Translations under genes and position numbers: made by a program
In this document: in pieces, positions 9,401 through 61,115 of the stretch
How the letters are laid out: each line of letters opens with the position of its first letter
Numbering within the stretch: position 1 is the stretch's first letter
NCBI RefSeq assembly: GCF_046119375.1
Contig: NW_027362763.1
Coordinates: 288,796,001 to 288,860,000 of the forward strand
Reading direction: 5' to 3'
From: Phyllobates terribilis
Lineage: Eukaryota
Length of the DNA stretch: 64,000 nucleotides
The notes under the pieces: model-generated
What the model was told of the DNA's origin: nothing
Databases searched by the model: none
Seen by the model: only the letters and a program-made list of their open reading frames with translations

Positions 9401-10979
9401 TGGCGCTGTACCCAACTCATCCAGGGCCCTGGTGCGGTGGCTCACTGGGTAATAAAGGGGTTAGGGCCAGCTTGGCATTATCAGCTGGCCCTTAGCCCGA
9501 AATTCATGGGGTCACGCCAATATTAGACATGACCACCATGAATTTCTAGTAAAGTATTTAAAAAAGCACAACACCCAGAAAAAAGTCCTTTAATTGAAAT
9601 AAACACACAATTCTTTATTGTTCTAAATTAAACCATACTTACCATCACGCCCATTCCAGCTGAAGCCAACGATCTCCTGCAATAAAAGAAAAATAATAAA
9701 GCAACCTCATCCTTACCTTTCCATGGTTCCCACGACAGCTTCAGCTCTGCTACATCGAGATGACAGGCTGGACCGCAGCAGAACGCTGCCATCCAGCCTG
9801 TCATCCCGCGGACACTGAGAAGCACAGGCATGCTTGCGCTCCTCAGTGTCTCGCTGTGACGGCATCCAGATGAGCAGAGTCTCACGCTCACCGCATGCGC
9901 AGGAGAATTCTCCCACGCTGTCAGTGACGTGCATGAGGTGAGCTGAGTTCATTGGACATGACCTCGGCTCATCTGGATGTGGGCATGATAGCGGCACCCT
10001 GGGGTATACCGTTTCCAGATAAGTGGCGGGGTCTCGGACTAGTCCGGTTAATTTAAAATATTAATGCAGGCTGCAGTGTTTCTGCATGTATCAACAGCAG
10101 CCTATTTGTTATATGTTAGATACTGCAGGATTAAAGAGTTATTCTCATCTTGTTAAATGAGTGAAATTACAAAGTGCTTGTAAAAGCAAGCAACTCTGCA
10201 GTTTATCTCTTATTAAAAATCCTCTCGGTTCTCAACAATGGAGGGATTTTTAATTCTACCGATTACTGCGTTACCTAGGTTACCGACCACCTCTGCAGTC
10301 CATCAGAGGTGGCCCGTCTGTTAGGCAAGGAGTGTGCACTTGCAAACATTTTGATTTGCTCTGATGTTCTCTAGATGACTGGATAGCTTCCATCCCTATG
10401 CGCTCCTCCGACGCTGCAGAGGTCTAGCTGCCTCTGCCTTCAGCATCAAAGAAGGCACAATTAGGGCCAGTGGTGCAACCATGCAGTTGGTTCAAACTGT
10501 CAATCATCAGGAGTGCACTACCCCTTGGAAAGCAGGAAGCCAAGAGGCAAGGGGGTAGTGGCTCCTGAAGAACACTCATGTCCCAACCCCTTTAAAGGGA
10601 TTGTTCCTTTTTTTAGAAAATGTATCCTTATATGCACAGTTCATTATAAAAAACAAACTATGCTTTACTTACTCTCCCCCAGGTCCAGTCCACTGTCTCC
10701 ACCAGTGGCGTACTGCCAATGGCTTCAGGCCACGCTCTGCTGCTGATAGGAGAAAATGGCAGCGGAGCTGGAGGGATTCGTCCTCTGCTTCCCGTCCGGC
10801 GCTTTCTCCCTGACACAGACGCGCCCAGCTTGATGACGTCATCATGCAGCGCGTGCCTGGGTCAGGGAGAAAGTTGCTGGGAACGAGGATGCTGCAGGGG
10901 AGCGAGCTGAGAGGTAAGTGTTTTTTTTTGTTTTTTTTACTGAAATGCTGGGGAGAGGAACAGGTGAATGAGGGGAGGT

Positions 10980-11905
10980 GGGAGAGAGCAATTATGGGGA
11001 TGGTGGCGATGGGGAGAGCAATGATTGGGCTGGGGAGAGCAATGATGGGGATGGTGGCGATGGGGTCAGCTATGATGAGGATGGTGGCGATGGGGAGAGC
11101 AATGATGGGGCTGTCGAGGGCATTGATGGGGCTGGGGAGAACAATGATGGGGACAGTGGCGATGGGGAGAGCAATGATGGGGACAGTGGCGATGGGGTCA
11201 GCTATGATGAGGATGGTGGCGATGGGGAGAGCAATGATGGGGCTGTCGAGGGCATTGATGGGGCTGGGGAGAACAATGATGGGGACAGTGGCGATGGGGA
11301 GAGCAATGATTGATGAGAATGATGGCGATGGGGAGAGCAGTGATGGGGCTGGGGAGAGCAATGATGGGGATGATGGGGCGAGCAATGATGTGGCTGGGGA
11401 GAGCAATAATTGAGATGTTGGGGCTGGGGAGAGCAATGATGGGGCTGAGGAGAGCAATGATGGGGATGGTAGGCTGGGGAGAGCAATGATGGGGCTGGGA
11501 GAGCAATTATGGGGTTGGGGAGAGCAATGATGGGGCTGGGGAAAGCAATGATGGGGATGGTGGGGCTGGGGCGAGCAATGATGGGGATGAGGAGAGCAAT
11601 AATGGGTATGGTGGGACTGGGGAGAACAATGATGGGGATGGTGGGGATGGGGAGAGCAATGATTGGGGTTGGGGAGAGCAATGATGGGGCTGAGGAGAGC
11701 AATCATGGGGCTGGGGAGAGCAATGATGGAGGAGCTGGGACAGAGCAATGATGGAGGAGCTGGGACAGAGCAATGATGGAGGAGCTGGGACAGAGCAATG
11801 ATGGAGGAGCTGGGACAGAGCAATGATGGAGGAGCTGGGACAGAGCAATGATGGAGGAGCTGGGACAGAGCAATGATGGAGGAGCTGGGACAGAGCAAAG
11901 ATGGG
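10980..11905 (+). repeat. G-rich degenerate tandem array ending in a 25-bp repeat (7 full copies, 11718-11900)
   Basis: GAGCAATGATGGGG-based units; 132-bp internal duplication (11111 and 11243); GAGCAATGATGGAGGAGCTGGGACA. Confidence 0.9.
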
Positions 11906-12148: not shown

Positions 12149-13744
12149 CAGTACAGACCAAAAGTTTGGACACACCTTCTCATTTAAAGATTTTTCTGTA
12201 TTTTCATGACTATGAAAATTGTACATTCACCCTGAAGGCATCAAAACTATGAATTAACACATGTGGAATTATATACTTAACAAAAAAGTGTGAAACAACT
12301 GAAAATATGTCTTATATTCTAGGTTCTTCAAAGTAGCCACCTTTTGCTTTGATGACTGCTTTGCACACTCTTGGCATTCTCTTGATGAGCTTCAAGAGGT
12401 AGTCACCGGAAATGGTTTTCACTTCACAGGGGTGTCCTGTCAGGTTTAATAAGTGGGATTTCTTGCCTTATAAATGGGGTTGGGACCATCAGTGGTGTTG
12501 TGCAGAAGTCTGGTGGATACACAGCTGATAGTCCTACTGAATAGATTGTTAAAATTTGTATTATGGCAAGAAAAAAGCAGCTATGTAAAGAAAAACGAGT
12601 GCCCATCATTACTTTAAGAAATGAAGGTCAGTTAGTGCGAAAACTTTGAAAGTGTCCCCAAGTGCAGTTGCAAAAGCCATCAAGCGCTACAAAGAAATTG
12701 GCTCATATGAGGACCGCCCCAGGAAAGGAAGACTAAGAGTCACCTCTGCTTCTGAGGATAAGTTTATCCGAGTCACCAGCCTCAGAAATCGCAGGGTAAC
12801 AGCAGCTCAGATTAGAGACCAGGTCAATGCCACACAGAGTTCTAGCTGCAGACACATCTCTACAACAACTGTTAAGAGGAGACTTAGTGCAGCAGGCCTT
12901 CATGGTAAAATAGCTGCAAGGAAACCACTGCCAAGTACAGGCAACAAGCAGAAGAGACTTGTTTGGGCTAAAGAACACAAGGAATTGACATTAGACCAGT
13001 GGAAATCTGTGCTTTGGTCTGATGAGTCCAAATTTGAGATCTTTGGTTCCAACCACCGTATCTTTGGGCGACGCAGAAAAGGTGAACAGATGGACTCTAC
13101 ATGCCTGGTTCCCACCGTGAAGCATGGAGGAGGAGGAGGTGTGATGGTGTGGGGTGCTTTGCTGGTGACACTGTTGAGGATTTATTCAAAATTGTAGGCA
13201 TACTGAACCAACATGGCTACCACAGCATCTTGCAGCGGCATGCTATTCCATCCGGTTTGCGTTTAGTTGGACCATCATTTATTTTTCAACAGGACAGTGA
13301 CCCCAAACACACCTCCAGGCTGTGTAGGGGCTATTTGACCAAGAAGGAGAGTGATGGGGTGCTACGCCAGATGACCTGGCCTCCACAGTCACCAGACCTG
13401 AACCCAATCGAGATGGTTTGGGGTGAGCTGGACCGCAGAGTGAAGGCAAAAGGGCCAACAAGTGCTAAGCATCTCTGGGAACTCCTTCAAGATTGTTGGA
13501 AGACCATCAAGAGAATGCCAAGAGTGTGCAAAGTAGTCATCAAAGCAAAAGGTGGCTACTTTGAAGAACCTAGAATATAAGACATATTTTCAGTTGTTTC
13601 ACACTTTTTTTGTTAAGTATATAATTCCACATGTGTTAATTCATAGTTTTGATGCCTTCAGTGTGAATGTACAATTTTCATAGTCATGAAAATGCAGAAA
13701 AATCTTTAAATGAGAAGGTGTGTCCAAACTTTTGGTCTGTACTG
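12149..13744 (+). mobile_element. Tc1/mariner DD38E (Intruder-type) element, copy A; transposase pseudogenised
   Basis: TA|CAGTACAGACCAAAAGTTTGG...CCAAACTTTTGGTCTGTACTG|TA with long TIRs. ATG 12563 (MARKKQL). Compared with copy B it has a 10-bp deletion near 12643, a frameshift near 13152 and a 27-bp deletion near 13508. There are 38 residues between QQD and the PIE glutamate. Confidence 0.93.
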
Positions 13745-38036: not shown

Positions 38037-39266
38037 TAAATCAGGTTTTGTGTTACCTGACCTGTATTTTTAAAACATTTTTTGCAATTTATTTTTCCTT
38101 GTGTGATGTAAAATCTATACTAAAAATTAAAAAAATAGAAATCTTGTAATATTCACAGTGGCCACTGGGGCTTTTTTAGACTTCTTGTTGTTTCAGGAAA
38201 CAACACGGGTACATAGCCACATTGATGAGACCACAGCTATATCTTTTCTATTGAAGCATCTAATGAACCTGTACAAAGGTTATTGTGAAGGGAGGAGGAA
38301 CAGGATCAGCTGTGACCTCACCTATTATTAGTGCTGAATACTGTATTATCGACTGTGCTCAAGGTGTTGCCTATCATTGTCATCCTGCCTCTGTTGAGGG
38401 TTATTTTCTGATGTCCGCTTCCCTTCGGTTTAAAGTCAATTGCGAATAATGTAGATAAGGTTTCCTCTCGTTTTAGGCTGGCCAGACAGATTTCCATTGA
38501 ATTGGTAAAGCACCAGTAGCTTAGTAGCATTTACAGTAGTTGCAGCCATAACTGAGTGCTCACATGAGATGTTCACATGCTCTTCTGCCACTTGATAGAT
38601 TTGCAGCTCTATAGGTAGATGCTATACATAACTATATTTATATATTTACTATATGATGCTACCTATATCATCACAGTCTCCATTCATGTGTTAGGTCGAA
38701 TATAACATTTTACCAGACTCGTAGATTTCAAGTCACTTGTGTATCATAATGGCTTTTATACCAAGCACAAGCAATTTTGTCAGGTCTCCTTTAATTGCGT
38801 CACACAGGATTTACCCATTTTGTATACAATAAACTAGATGTAAATGACACCGGCGCACTTCTGCCCCTATCCCGAACGCCTCACATACAGTGGCCACCAG
38901 GGCTTCAATGAGAACATATTGGTGCCTTAATGTTGGTTTTAAATTGATAATTAGGGCTGCGTTATGTAACGTATGTCTTGTGTGCATTGTCTTCTCATGA
39001 TTTCACACTGTCTTTTTGGTGAATTATGTGCAATAAATTCTAAATAGTTCTCACACTATAAAGAATGACTTGCACTATAAGAATTTTGGAAATGTTTTAG
39101 ATGTGGTTATTGAGTCTATTTGTACATCAGCTTTGTGATAGCTGCATTTTTATTGTTTTAAATAAAAGTGCATTTTCTAAATCATATATCTGTGTGTCTT
39201 TATCTGATATACACTAGACATAATTTAGCCTAAAATATACAAACAATTTAATTGAGCATAGACGTA

Positions 39267-40893
39267 CAGTACAGACCAAAAGTTTGGACACTCCTCATTT
39301 AAAGATTTTTCTGTGTTTTCATGACTATGAAAATTGTCCATTCACACTGAAGGCATCAAAACTATGAATTAACACATGTGGAATTATATACTTAACAAAA
39401 AAGTGTGAAACAACTGAAAATATGTCTTATATTCTAGGTTCTTCAAAGTAGCCACCTTTTGCTTTGATGACTGCTTTGCACACTCTTGGCATTCTCTTGA
39501 TGAGCTTCAAGAGGTAGTCACCGGAAATGGTTTTCACTTCATAGGTGTGCCCTGTCAGGTTTAATAAGTGGGATTTCTTGCCTTATAAATGGGGTTGGGA
39601 CCATCAGTTGTGTTGTGCAGAAGTCTGGTGGATATACAGCTGATAGTCCTACTGAATAGACTGTTAGCTGCTTTTTTCTTGCCATAGTACAAATTCTAAA
39701 TAAAGAAAAACGAGTGGACATCATTACTTTAAGAAATGAAGGTCAGTCAGTCCGAAAAATTGGGAAAACTTTGAAAGTGTCCCCAAGTGCAGTTGCAAAA
39801 ACCATCAAGTGCTACAAAGAAACTGGCTTACATGAGGACCGCCCCAGGAAAGGAAGACCAAGAATCACCTCTGCTTCTGAGGATAAGTTTATCCGAGTCA
39901 CCAGCCTCAGAAATCACAGGTTAACAGCAGCTCAGATTAGAGACCAGGTCAATACCACACAAAGTTCTAGCAGCAGACACATCTCTACAGCAACTGTTAA
40001 GAGGAGACTTTGTGCAGCAGGCCTTCATGGTAAAATAGCTGCTAGGAAACCACTGCGAAGGACAGGCAACAAGCAGAAGAGACTTGTTTGGGCTAAAGAA
40101 CACAAGGAATGGACATTAGACCAGTGGAAATCTGTGCTTTGGTCTGATGAGTCCAAATTTGAGATCTTTGGTTCCAACCACTGTGTCTTTGTGCGACGCA
40201 GAAAAGGTGAACGGATGGACTCTACATGCCTGGTTCCCACCGTGAAGCATGGAGGAGGAGGTGTGATGGTGTGGGGGTGCTTTTTTGGTGACCCTGTTGG
40301 GGATTTATTCAAAATTGAAGGCATACTGAACCAGCATGGCTACCACAGCATCTTGCAGTGGCATGCTATTCCATCCGGTTTGCATTTAGTTAGACCATCA
40401 TTTATTTTTCAACAGGACAATGACCCCAAACACACCTCCTGGCTGTGTAAGAGCTATTTGACCAAGAAGGAGAGTGATGGGGTGCTACGCCAGATGACCT
40501 GGCCTCCACAGTCACCAGACCTGAACCCAATCGAGATGGTTTGGGGTGAGCTGGACTGCAGAGTGAAGGCAAAAGGGCCAACAAGTGCTAAGCATCTCTG
40601 GGAACTCCTTCAAGATTGTTGGAAGACCATTTCCGGTGACTACCTCTTGAAGCTCATCAAGAGAATGCCAAGAGTGTGCAAAGCAGTCATCAAAGCAAAA
40701 GGTGGCTACTTTGAAGAACCTAGAATATAAGACCTATTTTCAGTTGTTTCACACTTTTTTGTTAAGTATATAATTCCACATGTGTTAATTCACAGTTTTG
40801 ATGCTTTCAGTGTGAATGTACAATTTTCAAAGTCATGAAAATACAGAAAAATCTTTAAATGAGAAGGTGTGTCCAAACTTTTGGTCTGTACTG
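39267..40893 (+). mobile_element. Tc1/mariner DD38E (Intruder-type) element, copy B; open 338-codon transposase frame (39714-40730) with its start codon inverted
   Basis: TA TSD on both sides, TIRs of about 270 bp, WSDESKF / FQQDNDPKH / SPDLNPIE triad with hand-counted D-38-E spacing. Confidence 0.95.
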
Positions 40894-41049
40894 TATGTAC
40901 AAAACCTTGGAAGTCATATTTGTATGTGATACTTTCTTGCATGGGTAATGGTACATGCTAATTGGCTTGTCCTGTACTTCATTTATGAATATGAAGGAGA
41001 CATTAGGGAGTACACTGTGTTATGTACATGCACCATGCCTTCATTTATA

Positions 41050-54600: not shown

Positions 54601-57600
54601 CACCATGGCCACTCGATTCACAACGTTGACAGCTCTGGTGGACATTCCAGCAGTCGGCATGCCAATTGCACGCTCCTTGCGACATCTGTGGCATTGTGCT
54701 GTGTGATAAAACTGCACATTTTAGAGTGGCCTTTTATTGTGGTAGCCTAAGGGTATGTGCAATAACCATGTGTCTAATCAGCATCTGGATATGCCACACC
54801 TGGGAGGTGGATGAATTATCTCGGCAAAGGAGAAGAGCTCAGTGACACAGATTTAGACAAATTTGTGAACAATATTTGAGGGAAAAAGGTCTTTTGTGGA
54901 CATAGAAAAAGTCTTAGATCTTTGAGTTCAGCTTATGAAAAATGGGAGCAAAAATAAAAGTGTTGCGTTGTATTTTTGTTCAATATATTTTAGAATTTTA
55001 ATATCCAAATTGCACTTGGCAGTTTTTTTTTTATCATCCGTTTTTAAAAACTGAAGGAAGTCGATTGTCTGAACTGTTCTCCATTGACACTTAGCAATGG
55101 ATCAGTTAAACACAGATATAAAACTGATGTATTTATTTTTCAGCTGTTTTTTGACGGATGCCCATTTACTTGAATGGTCGAGTCTGATGGAAAGTAAGAC
55201 AAGCTCTATGGGTCTGTATACGCTGTCTTAAAAACAGAGGTGTGAGTTTAGCCTTCCGGCTTCACAGATCTGCCATTGGCTCTGTGTGTAATAAGTATGC
55301 TGCACTGTATACAATACGTAGGGCTATGCCTTTGTATTGGAACACTTCATAAACTGTACTTTTCGATATTGTAAAAATAATGTGTGACGCAACCAGGCAG
55401 GCATATGCTGCAGTTCTTACAGGTCTGTTCACATCTACAGTTTTACTTCTGTCAGAGGTTAAATGTGTAACGTGTGACATATGTTGGGATTCATGGTTCT
55501 TACACTAAACCTATGGTAAAAACAAGATTCATAGAAGTTTATGGATATCAGTGCAGTCACTGGCAGCACATACAGGCGTATACTGTATACCCCAGTCTGC
55601 ACTGTGACCTGATGATACCACAATCTGTGAAATTGTGTCTGTAGCTAGGGTGGTTTAGGGCTTCTGAACTAACAATATACTGCGCTGCTTTCTTTACCAT
55701 TTTTGGGTTCTCTCACACTGGCGTATAACACGGCCGAGTGCTCTGCGATGTTTTGTCGGATAGCACTCGGCCCAGTGTTATACTATGGGGCAGTGAAGAT
55801 CTCCGATTATTTTCTCATGCCGATTAGGCATGAGAAAATAAATCACAGCATGCTGCGGGTGCATCCGATGATCAGATCACACACACCCATACAAGTCTAT
55901 GGGTGCGTGTGAAACATTGGACTGCACTTGGATGTCATCTGAGTGCAGTCTAATGTATGCCCACCAAGACAATGCAGAAGATGGAGAAAGTTCTCTGTCT
56001 TATCCGCAACTGTTCTGAGATTCTCTCATGCAAAAGACTCAGATCACAGTAAGGTGACACTCAGATCAAACTATGGCAGAATTTGAGCCGAGTTTCGTTA
56101 GCATAATCGGCCCGATTCTCCGGGATTAGAGAATCAACGCCAGTGTGAGTGAGCACTTATTAATAAGAGAACCTGACTACATCGGTCACAGCCGTGCAGT
56201 CTCCTTACAGCTGTGCAGTCTCCAAATGCAGCCATGCGGTCTCTATACAGCCATGCAATCTCCATATAGAGCCATGCAGTCTCCATACGGCCATCCACTC
56301 TCCACATACAGCCAAGCAGTCTCCATATACAGCCATGCAGTCTCTATACAGCTGTATAGTCTCCATATACAGCCATGCAGTCTCCATATGGCCGTCCACT
56401 CTCCACATACAGCCAAGCAGTCTCCATATACAGCCATGCAGTCTCTATACAGCTGTATAGTCTCCATATACAGCCATGCAGTCTCCATATGGCCGTCCAC
56501 TCTCCGCATACAGCCGAGCAGTCTCCATATACAGCAATGCAGTCTCTATACAGCTGTATAGTCTCCATATACAGCCATGCAGTCTCCATATGGCCGTCCA
56601 CTCTCCACATACAGCCAAGCAGTCTCCATATACAGCCATGCAGTCTCTATACAGCTGTATAGTCTCCATATACAGCCATGCAGTCTCCTTATGGCCGTCC
56701 ACTCTCCACATACAGCCAAGCAGAAGACATATACAGCCACGCAGTCTCTATACAGCCATATAAAAAAGGCTACGTGGCACTCCTTTATTGTTTTGGGAGC
56801 CCAGAAAGGATTCCACTCCGTACGTAAAAAACAAAATGAACCTGGCACTCCAAGATATGGTGAAAAGATTTTAGGAATTTATTTACATGATTCTTCAAAA
56901 TTAATTTTTGACGTTTCGGCCTCATACGGCCTTCATCAGAACAGGATGCTGCCCAATGGATGTGGGGGATGCGCTCCCCGACAACACGGTCGTGCTCCTC
57001 TCCCTTTAGCGCCATTACATTTATGCCCTTCTCTCCAGTGACTTTGCAGTTGATTGATCCTCTATCCTCCACACATAGCCATATACAGCCATACTGTTGT
57101 CTAGTCTTCATAAAGCTGAACACTCTGAATATGCAAAAGAGCAGTGTCCATATGCAGCCGTATACAGTAGTATAGTCTCCATAGAGCCGAGCAGTCTCTA
57201 CACACAGCCATATACAGTAGTATAGTCTCCATACAGCCGAGCAGTCTCCACACACAGCCGTATACAGTAGTATAGTCTCCATACAGCCGAGCAGTCTCCA
57301 CACACAACAGTATACAGTAGTATAGTCTCCATACAGCCATGCAGTCTCCACACACAACAGTATACAGTAGTATAGTCTCCATACAGCCGAGCAGTCTCCA
57401 CACACAGCCGTATACAGTAGTATAGTCTCCATACAGCCATGCAGTCTCCACACACAACAGTATACAGTAGTATAGTCTCCATACAGCCGAGCAGTCTCCA
57501 CACACAACAGTATACAGTAGTATAGTCTCCATACAGCCATGCAGTCTCCACACACAACAGTATACAGTAGTATAGTCTCCATACAGCCGAGCAGTCTCCA

Positions 57601-58338
57601 CACACAACAGTATACAGTAGTATAGTCTCCATACAGCCATGCAGTCTCCACACACAGCCGTATACAGTAGTATAGTCTCCATACAGCCGAGCAGTCTCCA
57701 CACACAACAGTATACAGTAGTATAGTCTCCATACAGCCGAGCAGTCTCCACACACAGCCGCATACAGTAGTATAGTCTCCATACAGCCATGCAGTCTCCA
57801 CACACAACAGTATACAGTAGTATAGTCTCCATACAGCCGAGCAGTCTCCACACACAACAGTATACAGTAGTATAGTCTCCATACAGCCATGCAGTCTCCA
57901 CACACAACAGTATACAGTAGTATAGTCTCCATACAGCCGAGCAGTCTCCACACACAACAGTATACAGTAGTATAGTCTCCATACAGCCGAGCAGTCTCCA
58001 CACACAACAGTATACAGTAGTATAGTCTCCATACAGCCGAGCAGTCTCCACACACAACAGTATACAGTAGTATAGTCTCCATACAGCCATGCAGTCTGTA
58101 CACAGCAGTATACAGTAGTATAGTCTCCATACAGCCATGCAGTCTCCACACACAACAGTATACAGTAGTATAGTCTCCATACAGCCGAGCAGTCTCCACA
58201 TACAGTCTGTATACAGCCCGTGTACATGCTGTGATCCCCCTGACATAAGATGAGTAGTACTACACCGCACATGCAGTTACCTGTAACCGTCCTGCCCCGG
58301 CCGGTCTCCTCCGCTGTCTGTTGTCTCCCGGTTGCCAT
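42410..58338 (-). CDS. LRRC34: Leucine-rich repeat-containing protein 34, spliced CDS complement(join(42410-42610,44776-44902,47731-47886,48597-48751,50139-50234,51569-51697,51800-51883,51972-52036,52239-52357,53020-53125,58281-58338)), 431 aa
   Basis: Exons translate to motifs matching recalled human LRRC34 (LRMTGNKIGNKGGMFFAAMLQINSTLEELDLGDCDL; IAFATVL..LNRP; IYIWGN; PYVVDGRVYLAE..GLKKHYYWTPTYG). All introns are GT-AG, phases chain correctly and the total is 1296 nt. Synteny with MYNN and LRRIQ4 agrees. Confidence 0.95.
44776..44902 (-). CDS. LRRC34: LRRC34 exon 10
   Basis: LAIVSNHITGEGLKALAAALKLNKGLEYIYIWGNVLDEDACQ. Confidence 0.95.
45005..45314. mobile_element. Fold-back hAT-type MITE in LRRC34 intron 9
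   Basis: Almost the whole element is an inverted repeat; 8-bp TSD ATTAGCAG on both sides. Confidence 0.88.
45716..46558. mobile_element. Solo LTR in LRRC34 intron 9, with an internal 46-bp repeat in 3 copies
   Basis: TG...CA ends with 5-bp TSD ATGAT on both sides. Confidence 0.85.
47731..47886 (-). CDS. LRRC34: LRRC34 exon 9
   Basis: NKITRDGVKCLAELLKKNTTLEILDLTSNRMEDEGVIYLAEAIQLNVSSLKA. Confidence 0.95.
48597..48751 (-). CDS. LRRC34: LRRC34 exon 8
   Basis: EDTTIHMALMLKVNNTLQEIHLSKHEMTDTGVERLCEALHENKTLRYLDLSC. Confidence 0.95.
50139..50234 (-). CDS. LRRC34: LRRC34 exon 7
   Basis: GIESLIAFATVLKHNNSIKSITLNRPLFYVLQ. Confidence 0.94.
51569..51697 (-). CDS. LRRC34: LRRC34 exon 6
   Basis: RNDTLRSLRMTGNKIGNKGGMFFAAMLQINSTLEELDLGDCDL. 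Confidence 0.96.
51800..51883 (-). CDS. LRRC34: LRRC34 exon 5
   Basis: DDCSLFYLNLLGNDIETDGAEQIAKALY; cag| acceptor and |gtaagt donor. Confidence 0.94.
51972..52036 (-). CDS. LRRC34: LRRC34 exon 4
   Basis: LDLRFNNLTNNGAVYIAKFLQ; aag| acceptor and |gtatgt donor. Confidence 0.93.
52239..52357 (-). CDS. LRRC34: LRRC34 exon 3
   Basis: QYMSTLKICGNNRLLDVKRVTDEDFLAIICVLKQNSFIT; tag| acceptor and |gtaggt donor. Confidence 0.92.
53020..53125 (-). CDS. LRRC34: LRRC34 exon 2
   Basis: ctcttcttcag|CC ATG ACC; MTTGLSQQYNMACTELNQQVNRFIEEVFRQTEQP; donor GA|gtaagt. Confidence 0.85.
54150..54985 (-). mobile_element. Degraded Tc1-like DD34E element in LRRC34 intron 1
   Basis: Minus ORF contains LQCDNARP..FLEAENIPVLSWPAYSPDMSPIE; TIR-like end near 54960-54985. 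Boundaries are approximate. Confidence 0.8.
55705..56156. mobile_element. Harbinger-type MITE
   Basis: Imperfect TIRs CTCACACTGGCG / CGCCAGTGTGAG; TSD imperfect. Confidence 0.55.
56205..56760. repeat. 101-bp higher-order repeat built from five monomers of about 20 bp, LRRC34 intron 1
   Basis: Hand count 20+20+21+19+21=101; ORF-track offsets are 101. Confidence 0.9.
57155..58205. repeat. 50-bp minisatellite, about 21 copies, LRRC34 intron 1
   Basis: CAGTATACAGTAGTATAGTCTCCATACAGCC(GA/AT)GCAGTCTCCACACACAA; period checked at 57308 and 57358. Confidence 0.95.
58281..58338 (-). CDS. LRRC34: LRRC34 probable coding exon 1 (MATGRQQTAEETGRGRTVT)
   Basis: ATG in GCCATGG context within a CpG island; donor ACAG|gtaact; phase 1 matches exon 2. 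The peptide is not conserved, so the in-frame ATG at 53123 (411 aa) is an alternative start. Confidence 0.65.
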
Positions 58339-58812: not shown

Positions 58813-61115
58813 CAGGGCCGGCCTTTGGGGCGTGCCAGCTGTGCAACTGCACAGGGCGCCTCAAACTTGAGAGTGAAGGGGGGCGCTGCGCTGGCTCCCT
58901 CCCCGTCGGTATTTTTCTTATGGAAGAGCAGAGAGGGAGCGCCCAGCGTTTCTTCTGTGCTCAGGCGCCGGCGCCCCCTCTCTGCTCTGAAATGTCCGGC
59001 CGGGACCCGGGCGCGCTGCACTCTCTCCTCCTCACACACAGGGGCGGAACTACCGCCCGTGCAGCCGGTTCATTGAACGGGGGCCCCGAGGGAGAGGGGG
59101 CCCCTTCAGCCTCCAGCAGGGCCGCCATCAGGGCATGACTGCCCTGACTCCAGTATGGGGCCCGGCCGGTAGGGGCCCCCTTGGGGGCCCCCCTCTTGTG
59201 TGTCTCTCTCCTCATGGGGCCCCCGGCCCCATGCTAAGCGCCGGGGCCGGAACATCTCTGTCATGATTTCTCTGACTTCCGGTCATGTGACGGCACCGTC
59301 ACATGACCGGAAGTCAGGAGAACCTGGTGTCATCGATTTGGACGAGGATTCTGCAGGGATCGCATGGGGGTAAGTATAACAAGTTTTTTTTTTTTTTTAA
59401 ATACAATTTACTAGGAGTGGGGGGAATGGGAGGTGCACATGTGGGGGAGGGGAATGAGAGAGGTGCACATGTGGGGGAGGGGGATGAGAGAGGTGCACAT
59501 GTGGGGGAGGGGGATGAGAGGTGTGCACATGTGGGGGAGGGGGATGAGAGAGGTGCACATGTGGGGGAGGGGGATGAGAGAGGTGCACATGTGGGGGAGG
59601 GGGATGAGAGATGTGCACATGGGGGGGATGAGAGAGGTGCACATGTGGGGGAGGGGGATGAGAGAGGTGCACATGTGGGGGAGGGGGATGAGAGAGGTGC
59701 ACATGTGGGGGAGTGGGATGAGAGAGGTGCACATGTGGGGGAGGGGGATGAGAGAGGGGCACATGTGGGGGAGGGGGATGAGAGAGGGGCACATGTGGGG
59801 GAGGGGGATGAGAGATGTGCACATGGGGGGGTGAGAGCTGCACATGGGGGAATTGGGAGAAAATGAGCTGCACATGGGGGAATTGGGAGTAGGGGGATAA
59901 TGAGCTGCACATAATGAATGTGGGGTGGGGGACAGTAAATGATGATGGGGTGGGGAGAGCAGGACATGATATAATGAATTGGGGCAGGGGGTGCATGTAA
60001 ATAATGAATGCGGGGAGCAGGAAGTATAGAGTAGGGGGCGTTGCGGATGCAGGAGTGTAACTGGTAACAAATTGGCGGAAAGAGTAGAGGTTCTAATTAA
60101 ATTATATATTAAGTGCCTATTTACAGTTAATGGGGGCACCGTGGTGGATTACAATTTATATTTGGAATGGTAGGTTGTATAATAACTAACCATATATTGA
60201 TGGTGGATACACGTCTGTATTCAGCTGCGTAATGTAGAAGTTGGGGAATGTGCTCTAGATAACTGTGTTATTTTATGCAGAGACGAGTCCTGGCTGGAAG
60301 ACGTAATGGCGGTCTGTGCTGGATGAAGGAGAAAAGCGTAGCTGAAGGACTTCACCTAGAGACGTCACCAGTGAGTCAGTGTATTACATGTACACTTACA
60401 CTATATACTATGTACCGGGCTCCTGTGTATAATGTCACTGGTGATCACTGTATTACCTGTACACTGACACTATATACAGAGCTCCTGTGTATAATGTCAC
60501 TGATGATCACTGTATTACCTGTACACTGACACTATATACAGAGCTCCTGTGTATAATGTCACTGGTGATCACTAGATTACCTGGACACTTACATTATACA
60601 TACCATGTATAGAGCTCCCGTGCATAATGACACTTATGGTAATATTAGTAATGTGGTGGTAATATTAGTAATGTGGTGGTAATATGTGGTCTGGTCATGG
60701 TGTGGCAGTTTTTCCCCCTTCTGTGTGGTATTATTCGGTCACTATGTTGTGGTAATATGTGGTCTGGTCATGGTGTGGCAGTATTCCCTGTATGTGGTAT
60801 TATTGGTCATTTTTAAAAAAAAATGTATATGACACATTCCCTTAAAGAAAACTAAATAAAAATATATCTAAAAAGAGTATTGGATATTTTAAGAAAATTT
60901 TAATAGGTTAGAGTAGGGCCCTGCCAGAAGAGTCTACCTTATCGTGGTGGCGGCTTTAAAACTTTTCAACTTTTGTTGCTTGTTATTACTTGATCATTTG
61001 ATTAATAAAAAATGCACTTGTTGTTTTCACCTACATGAGTTTAATTTTTTTTCTTTGGGGGGGGGCGCCAAGAGGGATTTCGCACAGGGCGCCATATACC
61101 CTAAGGCCGGCCCTG
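58813..61115. mobile_element. hAT-type non-autonomous element between the LRRC34 5' end and the LRRIQ4 coding exon
   Basis: TIR CAGGGCCGGCCTT / AAGGCCGGCCCTG; perfect 8-bp TSD ACAGCTAT (58805-58812 and 61116-61123). Confidence 0.9.
59433..59850 (+). repeat. 30-bp G-rich minisatellite, about 14 copies, inside the hAT element
   Basis: GCACATGTGGGGGAGGGGGATGAGAGAGGT. Confidence 0.93.

What the first reader, a model, noticed from the sequence alone, without database searches (positions are those of the whole stretch)
39664..39699. 28-bp micro-inversion flips the start codon of an otherwise intact DD38E transposase
Seen: copy A reads ..TT AAAATTTGTATT ATG GCA AGA AAA AAG CAG CTA TGT AAA GAA.. (MARKKQL). 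In copy B the same segment is reverse-complemented (39668-39695) between 4-bp inverted repeats TTAG and CTAA, and the ORF track shows MARKKQL on the minus strand. Re-inverting it gives MARKKQLNKEKR in frame with the GTG at 39714, a stop-free 350-aa transposase with intact triad and both TIRs. Inference: one template-switch event silenced a complete element. It could found a mobilisable non-autonomous sub-lineage or be reversible, and the element is easy to resurrect. An assembly artefact is possible.
Basis: partly seen in the sequence, partly recalled or inferred. Interest (0 to 1): 0.7.

Follow-up and report, generated by a model that had tools for sequence, protein, structure and literature searches.

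The report
Start-codon micro-inversion in dead frog transposon
One decayed copy of a known jumping gene (Intruder, a Tc1-type transposon) in what is probably a poison-frog genome has the 28 bases holding its start codon flipped between two 4-base inverted repeats, an ordinary copying or repair slip and not a new mechanism.

Summary
Copy B (element 39267-40893, TA on both sides) is colinear with copy A (12149-13744), except that 39668-39695 is the reverse complement, flanked directly by TTAG and CTAA.

The normal orientation is ancestral. It is the family majority in four sequencing runs, and it is present in 9 of 9 related elements from other hosts. Read in the other orientation, the piece gives MARKKQ+LNKEKRV, which matches the family N-terminus MARKKQLSKEKRVAII.

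The element is a typical Intruder (DD38E) transposon: D157, D247, E286, about 272-bp TIRs, and a 350-codon frame.

"Otherwise intact" overstates it:
- B carries about 28 private substitutions. In the coding sequence these are 18 replacements against 1 silent change.
- There is a 3-bp deletion in the left TIR.
- No in-frame ATG occurs before codon 180. GTG 39714 is simply Val13.

The event fits the published class of microinversions (17-33 nt, always flanked by short inverted repeats), which arise by template switching or microhomology-mediated break repair.

I could not confirm it in reads. Only Logan contigs were available, and none of the few pieces shown bridges the inversion.

First readers of this scan noted the same 28-bp flip at six or more other places in this genome. 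I could not check those notes. If they are right, B belongs to an amplified non-autonomous sub-lineage. Interest is low to moderate.

The parts
39265..39266 (.). TA target-site duplication, left side of copy B
   Evidence: Alignment of A and B. Homology starts after TA in both copies.
39267..39538 (+). Left terminal inverted repeat of copy B, about 272 nt. It holds an antisense copy of the last 36 codons of the transposase, and it has a 3-bp deletion about 27 nt from the end.
   Evidence: Inverted repeat I2; left-versus-right TIR alignment; minus-strand ORF 39427-39537 equals the C-terminus of the transposase.
39664..39667 (.). TTAG, left 4-nt inverted repeat directly adjacent to the inverted segment. 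It is present in the family majority.
   Evidence: In read laying, the joint 39663->39699 has 4 letters that fit either side, and the loose ends read ...TTAG followed by AATTTGTATTATGG.
39668..39695 (-). Inverted 28-nt segment: 10 nt of 5' leader, the ATG (39685-39683 on the minus strand) and codons 2-6 (MARKKQ). It has one private base change at 39687.
39696..39699 (.). CTAA, right 4-nt inverted repeat. It holds codon 7 (Leu) and the first base of codon 8.
39696..40730 (+). Codons 7-350 of the DD38E transposase plus the stop codon. The frame is open but has no start. D157, D247 and E286 are present. The first in-frame ATG is at 40215.
40622..40893 (-). Right terminal inverted repeat of copy B. 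It overlaps the last 36 codons of the transposase.
40894..40895 (.). TA target-site duplication, right side of copy B
12149..13744 (+). Copy A of the same element. The 28-mer at 12553-12580 is in normal orientation. The coding region is broken by 10-bp and 27-bp deletions and a frameshift. Its left repeat reads TTAA.

Best explanation
Copy B is a neutrally decaying copy of the known Tc1/mariner family Intruder (DD38E). A 28-nt piece holding the start codon was flipped in place between two directly adjacent 4-nt inverted repeats, TTAG and CTAA, which every normal copy carries.

The most likely mechanism is a replication or repair error of a known kind. Either the growing strand switches to the complementary strand at one repeat, copies the piece backwards and switches back at the other. 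Or a break inside the piece is repaired by microhomology-mediated break-induced replication.

The flip removes the only usable start. The frame has a stop at 39657 and no ATG until codon 180, behind the DNA-binding domain and the first catalytic Asp. This copy therefore cannot make transposase. The flip has no function of its own. It is one lesion among many in a copy that selection does not maintain.

Shown: the anatomy, the polarity, the family membership and the decay. Inferred: the mechanism and the lack of function. Open: whether the flip arose at this locus or was inherited from an already flipped source copy.
For: - Exact reverse-complement relation, 27 of 28 bases with no length change, against 0.00 expected by chance.
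- A 4-nt perfect inverted repeat abuts both edges. The chance of this is about 1/256.
- Polarity. Contigs of four runs show a joint '39663->39699 opposite strands' (16, 7, 15 and 7 contigs). Their loose ends spell the normal orientation, TTAG+AATTTGTATTATGGCAAGAAAA...GCAG+CTAAG.
- 9 of 9 related elements from other hosts are in normal orientation. Homologues start MARKKQLSKEKRVAII.
- Family: DD38E spacing, TA duplications, 1627 bp, about 272-nt TIRs, HTH_Tnp_Tc3_2 and DDE_3 domains. This fits PMC7731502.
- Decay: 28 B-derived substitutions, 18 nonsynonymous against 1 synonymous, 6 of CpG type, and a TIR deletion.
- Known class: 59 human/chimpanzee microinversions of 17-33 nt, all flanked by inverted repeats of 3-75 nt (PMC8755829). 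Template-switch model: PMC5453318.
Against: - No read-level confirmation. Only Logan contigs were available. They break at repeats and drop rare variants of a very high-copy family. None of the 32 pieces shown (of about 181,000) bridges the inversion.
- A contig of run X20 confirms only the left insertion junction (38950-39284, no differences).
- PMC8755829 argues that repeats of 3-4 nt are short for a double template switch, so the exact mechanism is uncertain.
- Unchecked scan notes report the same flip at other loci. That would mean the event did not happen in this copy.
Confidence: 0.78

Rival explanations
1. The flip is not private to this locus. It arose once in a source copy, and copy B is one of many descendants moved in trans by transposase from intact copies. 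That would make it a non-autonomous, start-less sub-lineage of Intruder marked by the inversion. This reading is compatible with the mechanism above. It differs only in where and when the event happened.
For: - Six or more first-reader notes in other pieces of the same genome describe a 36-letter finding with the same 28-bp start-codon flip. These are unchecked leads, not support.
- Tc1/mariner transposase acts in trans (established knowledge). Read laying shows internally deleted derivatives shared between runs, so defective copies of this family do spread (joints 39449->39917 and 39494->40185).
- Microinversions are very rare: about 2e-13 per nt per generation (PMC8755829). Several identical ones are therefore better explained by copying than by recurrence.
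Against: - I could not obtain a second inverted copy. There is only one in the window.
- The junction pattern has no hits in metagenome, prokaryote-genome or viral contigs.
- B's own differences from the majority each sit at about 1-2% of word depth, the background level, so no linked diagnostic variant is visible.
Confidence: 0.5
2. The inversion is an assembly or sequencing artefact. The real locus has the normal orientation.
For: No bridging contig was shown. The run with the left flank holds only 0.86 of the sampled words of 39540-39840.
Against: - An assembler has no path from the normal to the flipped form through a 4-nt repeat. Consensus over many reads removes single-read chimeras (inference).
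- The missing words are explained by Logan dropping low-depth variants of a repeat whose summed depth is about 10^5 times that of the flank.
- The inverted piece carries its own private base change at 39687, which fits an old, real sequence.
Confidence: 0.05
3. The site is a recurrent, possibly reversible flip. The TTAG/CTAA pair around the start codon would act as a hotspot that turns copies off, and perhaps on again, repeatedly.
For: Every normal copy carries the repeat pair. The same flip is reported at several loci, and other small flips near transposase starts are reported in this genome. These are unchecked notes.
Against: - 4-nt repeats are far too short for recombination, and a 28-bp spacer cannot loop (PMC8755829).
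- No recombinase is involved, and no mixed orientation was seen.
- The published rate makes recurrence at one site unlikely even with about 10^5 copies.
- A follow-up of a similar 40-bp flip in another family judged it an ordinary slip.
Confidence: 0.04
4. The piece was cut out by two nearby double-strand breaks and religated backwards by end joining, using the 4-nt repeats as compatible ends.
For: The clean, length-neutral inversion with 4-nt microhomology at both joints is also what this would give.
Against: Two breaks 28-36 nt apart are considered very unlikely (PMC8755829). The end product cannot be told apart by sequence.
Confidence: 0.08

Closest known systems
[quoted passage not shown]
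   Same: A pure reverse-complement replacement of 17-33 nt without length change. Perfect short inverted repeats abut the edges. Repeats of 4-8 nt were the commonest class there.
   Different: Here it lies in a transposon copy of a frog and removes a start codon. Polarity was set by paralogues and relatives from other hosts, not by an orthologous outgroup locus.
Short-range template-switch mutations (Loytynoja and Goldman 2017, PMC5453318)
   Same: A local inverted copy that looks like a cluster of mismatches. It is explained by the nascent strand copying the opposite strand between two switch points with microhomology.
   Different: Most reported events are shorter or replace sequence from a neighbouring template. 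This is an in-place flip of 28 nt.
Intruder (IT, DD38E) Tc1/mariner transposons (Gao et al. 2020, PMC7731502)
   Same: DD38E triad, TA duplication, 1.5-1.7 kb, long TIRs up to 272 bp, a transposase of about 350 aa, and presence in ray-finned fishes and a frog with very similar sequences.
   Different: That paper does not mention inversions (0 occurrences). The host here appears to be a dendrobatid frog with a very high copy number.
Non-autonomous derivatives of Tc1/mariner elements (internally deleted copies, MITEs)
   Same: Copies that keep the ends but cannot make transposase, and that can be moved in trans.
   Different: The usual lesion is an internal deletion. Here the full length is kept and only the start is flipped. 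Amplification of this form was not shown here.

Membership tests
Intruder (DD38E) family of Tc1/mariner | Catalytic D, D, E with 38 residues between the second D and E | tested here: met
   D157, D247, E286. Spacings are 89 and 38.
Intruder (DD38E) family of Tc1/mariner | TA target-site duplication and terminal inverted repeats; total length 1.5-1.7 kb | tested here: met
   TA at 39265-66 and 40894-95. The element is 1627 bp with about 272-nt TIRs. The ranges are from PMC7731502.
Intruder (DD38E) family of Tc1/mariner | Single ORF for a transposase of 341-379 aa with a paired-like HTH DNA-binding domain and a DDE domain | tested here: inconclusive
   The domains are present: HTH_Tnp_Tc3_2, HTH_23 and DDE_3. 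The 350 codons are all there, but codons 1-6 lie on the other strand, so no single ORF exists.
Intruder (DD38E) family of Tc1/mariner | Clusters with named IT reference transposases in a phylogeny | not tested
   The best relatives are 87-90% identical, 350-aa transposases of fishes and poison frogs. No named IT reference sequence was at hand.
Microinversion (IR-flanked, replication or repair error) | Segment of at least 15 nt replaced by its exact or near-exact reverse complement, with no length change | tested here: met
   28 nt, 27 of 28 bases, both flanks colinear.
Microinversion (IR-flanked, replication or repair error) | Inverted repeats abutting the edges of the segment | tested here: met
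   TTAG and CTAA are directly adjacent and are present in the uninverted majority.
Microinversion (IR-flanked, replication or repair error) | Derived state shown by outgroups | tested here: met
   Family majority in four runs, 9 of 9 relatives from other hosts, and protein N-termini.
Microinversion (IR-flanked, replication or repair error) | Present in raw reads of the individual | tested here: inconclusive
   Only contigs were served. The left flank junction is confirmed in X20, but no bridging piece over the inversion is listed.
Amplified non-autonomous sub-lineage | Two or more copies at different insertion sites sharing the same inversion and forming one clade | not testable with these tools
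   Only one inverted copy is in the window. The only hints are unchecked notes.
Programmed invertible DNA switch | Long inverted repeats recognised by a site-specific recombinase; both orientations coexisting | tested here: not met
   The repeats are only 4 nt and do not extend. There is no recombinase. No evidence of two orientations at this locus.

The most novel reading that the evidence does not exclude
The TTAG/CTAA pair around the Intruder start codon is a recurrent, perhaps reversible, flip site. The same 28-bp inversion would then arise independently in many copies and act as an on/off lesion for transposase coding capacity, instead of a single event that was copied.
Probability: 0.04. 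Interest if true: 0.65.

Novelty: new member of a known kind. Interest (0 to 1): 0.22.

Why it matters
As a single lesion it matters little. It is a clean example of a microinversion whose polarity and microhomology can be read directly, in a family that is already known and already reconstructed as an active tool.

It would matter more if the same flip marks many copies. A length-neutral lesion that kills the start codon and essentially cannot revert would be an ideal tag for following trans-mobilisation of non-coding copies. It could also date a burst of Intruder activity in a giant frog genome.

Tried and rejected
1. Read support. The look-up of sequencing runs gave only Logan contigs. Read laying on 38950-40350 showed the family majority and the left flank junction, but not the inverted junctions.
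2. Exact look-ups of the 338-aa frame and of the 61-aa minus-strand ORF spanning the flip found nothing on record.
3. A word search with the 61-aa ORF found no candidate.
4. The inverted-junction pattern had 0 hits in metagenome, prokaryote-genome and viral contigs. This is weak evidence, because those collections hold little frog DNA.
5. Fetching other loci of the Phyllobates terribilis and Ranitomeya imitator assemblies through their annotated proteins returned no DNA, because the files are too large.
6. Cluster members of the best protein hits are mostly from fishes, and none is a 338-aa start-less form.
8. I rejected GTG 39714 as a start. This is a eukaryote and the codon is Val13 of the family protein.
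9. I rejected reading the summed word depth as a copy number. I say only that the family is very abundant.
10. Loci L065, L070 and L076 come from human-skin metagenomes. I left them out of all comparisons.
11. I built no repaired or consensus element.

Full report
**What is there**

The window holds two copies of one 1.6-kb element.
- Copy A is at 12149-13744.
- Copy B is at 39267-40893.
- Each is bounded by TA and starts CAGTACAGACC.

The ends are about 272-nt inverted repeats. They reach into the coding region, so the left end carries an antisense copy of the last 36 codons.

The open frame 39714-40730 has HTH_Tnp_Tc3_2 and DDE_3 matches. Its catalytic residues are spaced D-89-D-38-E.

The best relatives are 350-aa transposases, 87-90% identical, from many fishes and from the poison frogs Phyllobates terribilis and Ranitomeya imitator.

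All of this fits the Intruder (DD38E) family as described in PMC7731502: 1.5-1.7 kb, TIRs up to 272 bp, TA duplication, and hosts among ray-finned fishes and a frog.

The genome is probably the golden poison frog. Three things point that way:
- the scan notes say so;
- one sibling note lies 564 Mb further along the same piece;
- the P. terribilis assembly has chromosomes of 0.93-0.99 Gb.

This identification is an inference.

**The observation**

A and B align colinearly except at 39668-39695. There B is the reverse complement of A, matching 27 of 28 bases, against 0.00 matches expected in shuffles.

The segment is bounded directly by TTAG (39664-67) and CTAA (39696-99). The repeat does not extend further.

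The minus strand 39685-39668 encodes MARKKQ. The plus strand from 39696 encodes LNKEKRVDIITL, in frame with the 338-codon frame.

**Polarity**

I laid Logan contigs of four runs on 38950-40350: three runs of the same species label and one of another species.

- The runs show a joint "39663->39699, opposite strands, 4 letters fit either side" in 16, 7, 15 and 7 contigs.
- The loose ends spell TTAG+AATTTGTATTATGGCAAGAAAA and ...AAAAAGCAG+CTAA(G).
- The family majority therefore has the normal orientation and already carries both 4-nt repeats. Copy A's TTAA is its own change.
- Nine of nine related elements fetched from metagenome contigs of other hosts also have the ATG in normal orientation.
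- Homologous proteins begin MARKKQLSKEKRVAIITLRNEGQ.

B's arrangement is therefore derived. Read in the other orientation, it gives the family N-terminus apart from two private changes (S8N, A14D).

**How intact is copy B?**

I polarised the A/B differences with two fish-derived relatives. B has 28 derived substitutions and A has 24.

- In B's coding region, 19 substitutions change 17 codons. They split into 18 nonsynonymous and 1 synonymous, and 6 are CpG-type changes of Arg codons.
- Several fall at positions where all eight aligned relatives agree: the A in CFAGD, the G in LVGPS, and the R in TSRLCK.
- The left TIR has lost 3 bp, 27 nt from its end, compared with its own right TIR and with copy A.
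- About 4.9% of possible substitutions in this frame create a stop. A frame with 19 hits therefore stays open 39% of the time.

The open frame is thus no sign of recent activity. The copy looks like ordinary neutral decay, and the order of the flip relative to the other lesions cannot be recovered.

**Consequence of the flip**

The frame has a stop at 39657 and no ATG until 40215. That is codon 180 in family numbering, behind the DNA-binding domain and the first catalytic Asp.

GTG 39714 is Val13 of the family protein. It appeared as a start only because the ORF tool uses the bacterial code. Copy B cannot encode a transposase.

**Mechanism**

The event has every feature of the published class of definite microinversions. 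That class comprises 59 events of 17-33 nt between human and chimpanzee, each flanked by inverted repeats of 3-75 nt abutting the edges, with 4-8 nt the commonest length (PMC8755829).

Two mechanisms are discussed there and in PMC5453318:
- a double template switch during replication;
- microhomology-mediated break-induced replication after a break inside the segment.

The authors think 3-4-nt repeats are short for the first. The sequence cannot tell the two apart. I take [quoted passage not shown] as the mechanism, with cut-and-religate as a weak alternative.

**Is it real?**

I could not show the inverted junctions in reads. The runs are served only as Logan contigs.

- The family is extremely abundant. 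Summed word depth is 10^5-10^6, against 10 on the unique flank.
- Contigs of the family are therefore about 100 nt long, and low-depth variants are dropped.
- Only 32 of about 181,000 pieces are listed.

One X20 contig (1131 nt, depth 10, no differences) covers 38950-39284, so the insertion itself is confirmed in that run.

An artefact seems unlikely. No assembler path leads through a 4-nt repeat, and the flipped piece has its own private base change at 39687. It is nevertheless not excluded.

**Private lesion or sub-lineage?**

This scan noted the same thing before on other DNA of this genome. At least six first-reader notes describe a 36-letter "28-bp micro-inversion flips the start codon" in other pieces. 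One more describes a 30-bp flip. A followed-up 40-bp flip in a Traveler element was judged an ordinary slip.

These notes are unchecked, and I could not test them:
- pattern scans of the available collections were blank;
- protein look-ups found nothing.

If the notes are right, recurrence is an unlikely cause, given a rate near 2e-13 per nt per generation. The natural reading is then one flip in a source copy, followed by trans-mobilisation. In that case copy B never coded for anything at this locus. I put this at about even odds.

**Verdict**

- It is a known kind of mutation in a known transposon family.
- An active Intruder has already been reconstructed and tested in HeLa cells (PMC7731502), so "resurrection" would add little.
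- I made no repaired or consensus sequence.
- Loci from human-skin metagenomes (L065, L070, L076) were left out of the comparisons.

Noticed in passing
window 18834-21619 (N run at 18388-18525 just before): A 37-bp satellite of about 76 copies, 95% alike. It sits next to the only assembly gap of the window.
   Followed up: no
window 39267-39538 and 40622-40893; also copy A 12149-12420: The long TIRs of this Intruder family overlap the last 36 codons of the transposase. Every copy therefore carries an antisense duplicate of its C-terminal coding region in the left end (minus-strand ORF 39427-39537).
   Followed up: partly
window 39264-40350 as laid: The family is extremely abundant in the runs of the same species label. 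Summed word depth is 10^5-10^6, against about 10 on the unique flank. Several internal-deletion joints recur in two or three runs (e.g. 39449->39917, 39494->40185, 40127->40203). This points to amplified deleted derivatives.
   Followed up: no
proteins P0005 and P0135-P0148: Many NCBI entries labelled Vibrio parahaemolyticus (partial 'helix-turn-helix' or 'transposase' proteins on contigs under 1.5 kb) are 88-90% identical to this vertebrate transposon. They are most likely fish DNA contaminating bacterial assemblies.
   Followed up: no
window 10979-11904, directly upstream of copy A: A G-rich minisatellite block with 25-30-bp units and higher-order periods of 81-181 bp. It ends about 240 bp before copy A.
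   Followed up: no
window 25721-26107, 56188-56759, 57139-58216, 59430-59831: Further tandem arrays with units of 32, 40-101, 50 and 30 bp, each 93-97% alike within the array.
   Followed up: no
proteins P0007, P0025, P0027, P0062: Annotated poison-frog proteins (EF-hand, mRNA-capping enzyme isoform, Ig-like) contain long stretches 83-92% identical to this transposase. These are probably transposon copies drawn into gene models.
   Followed up: no
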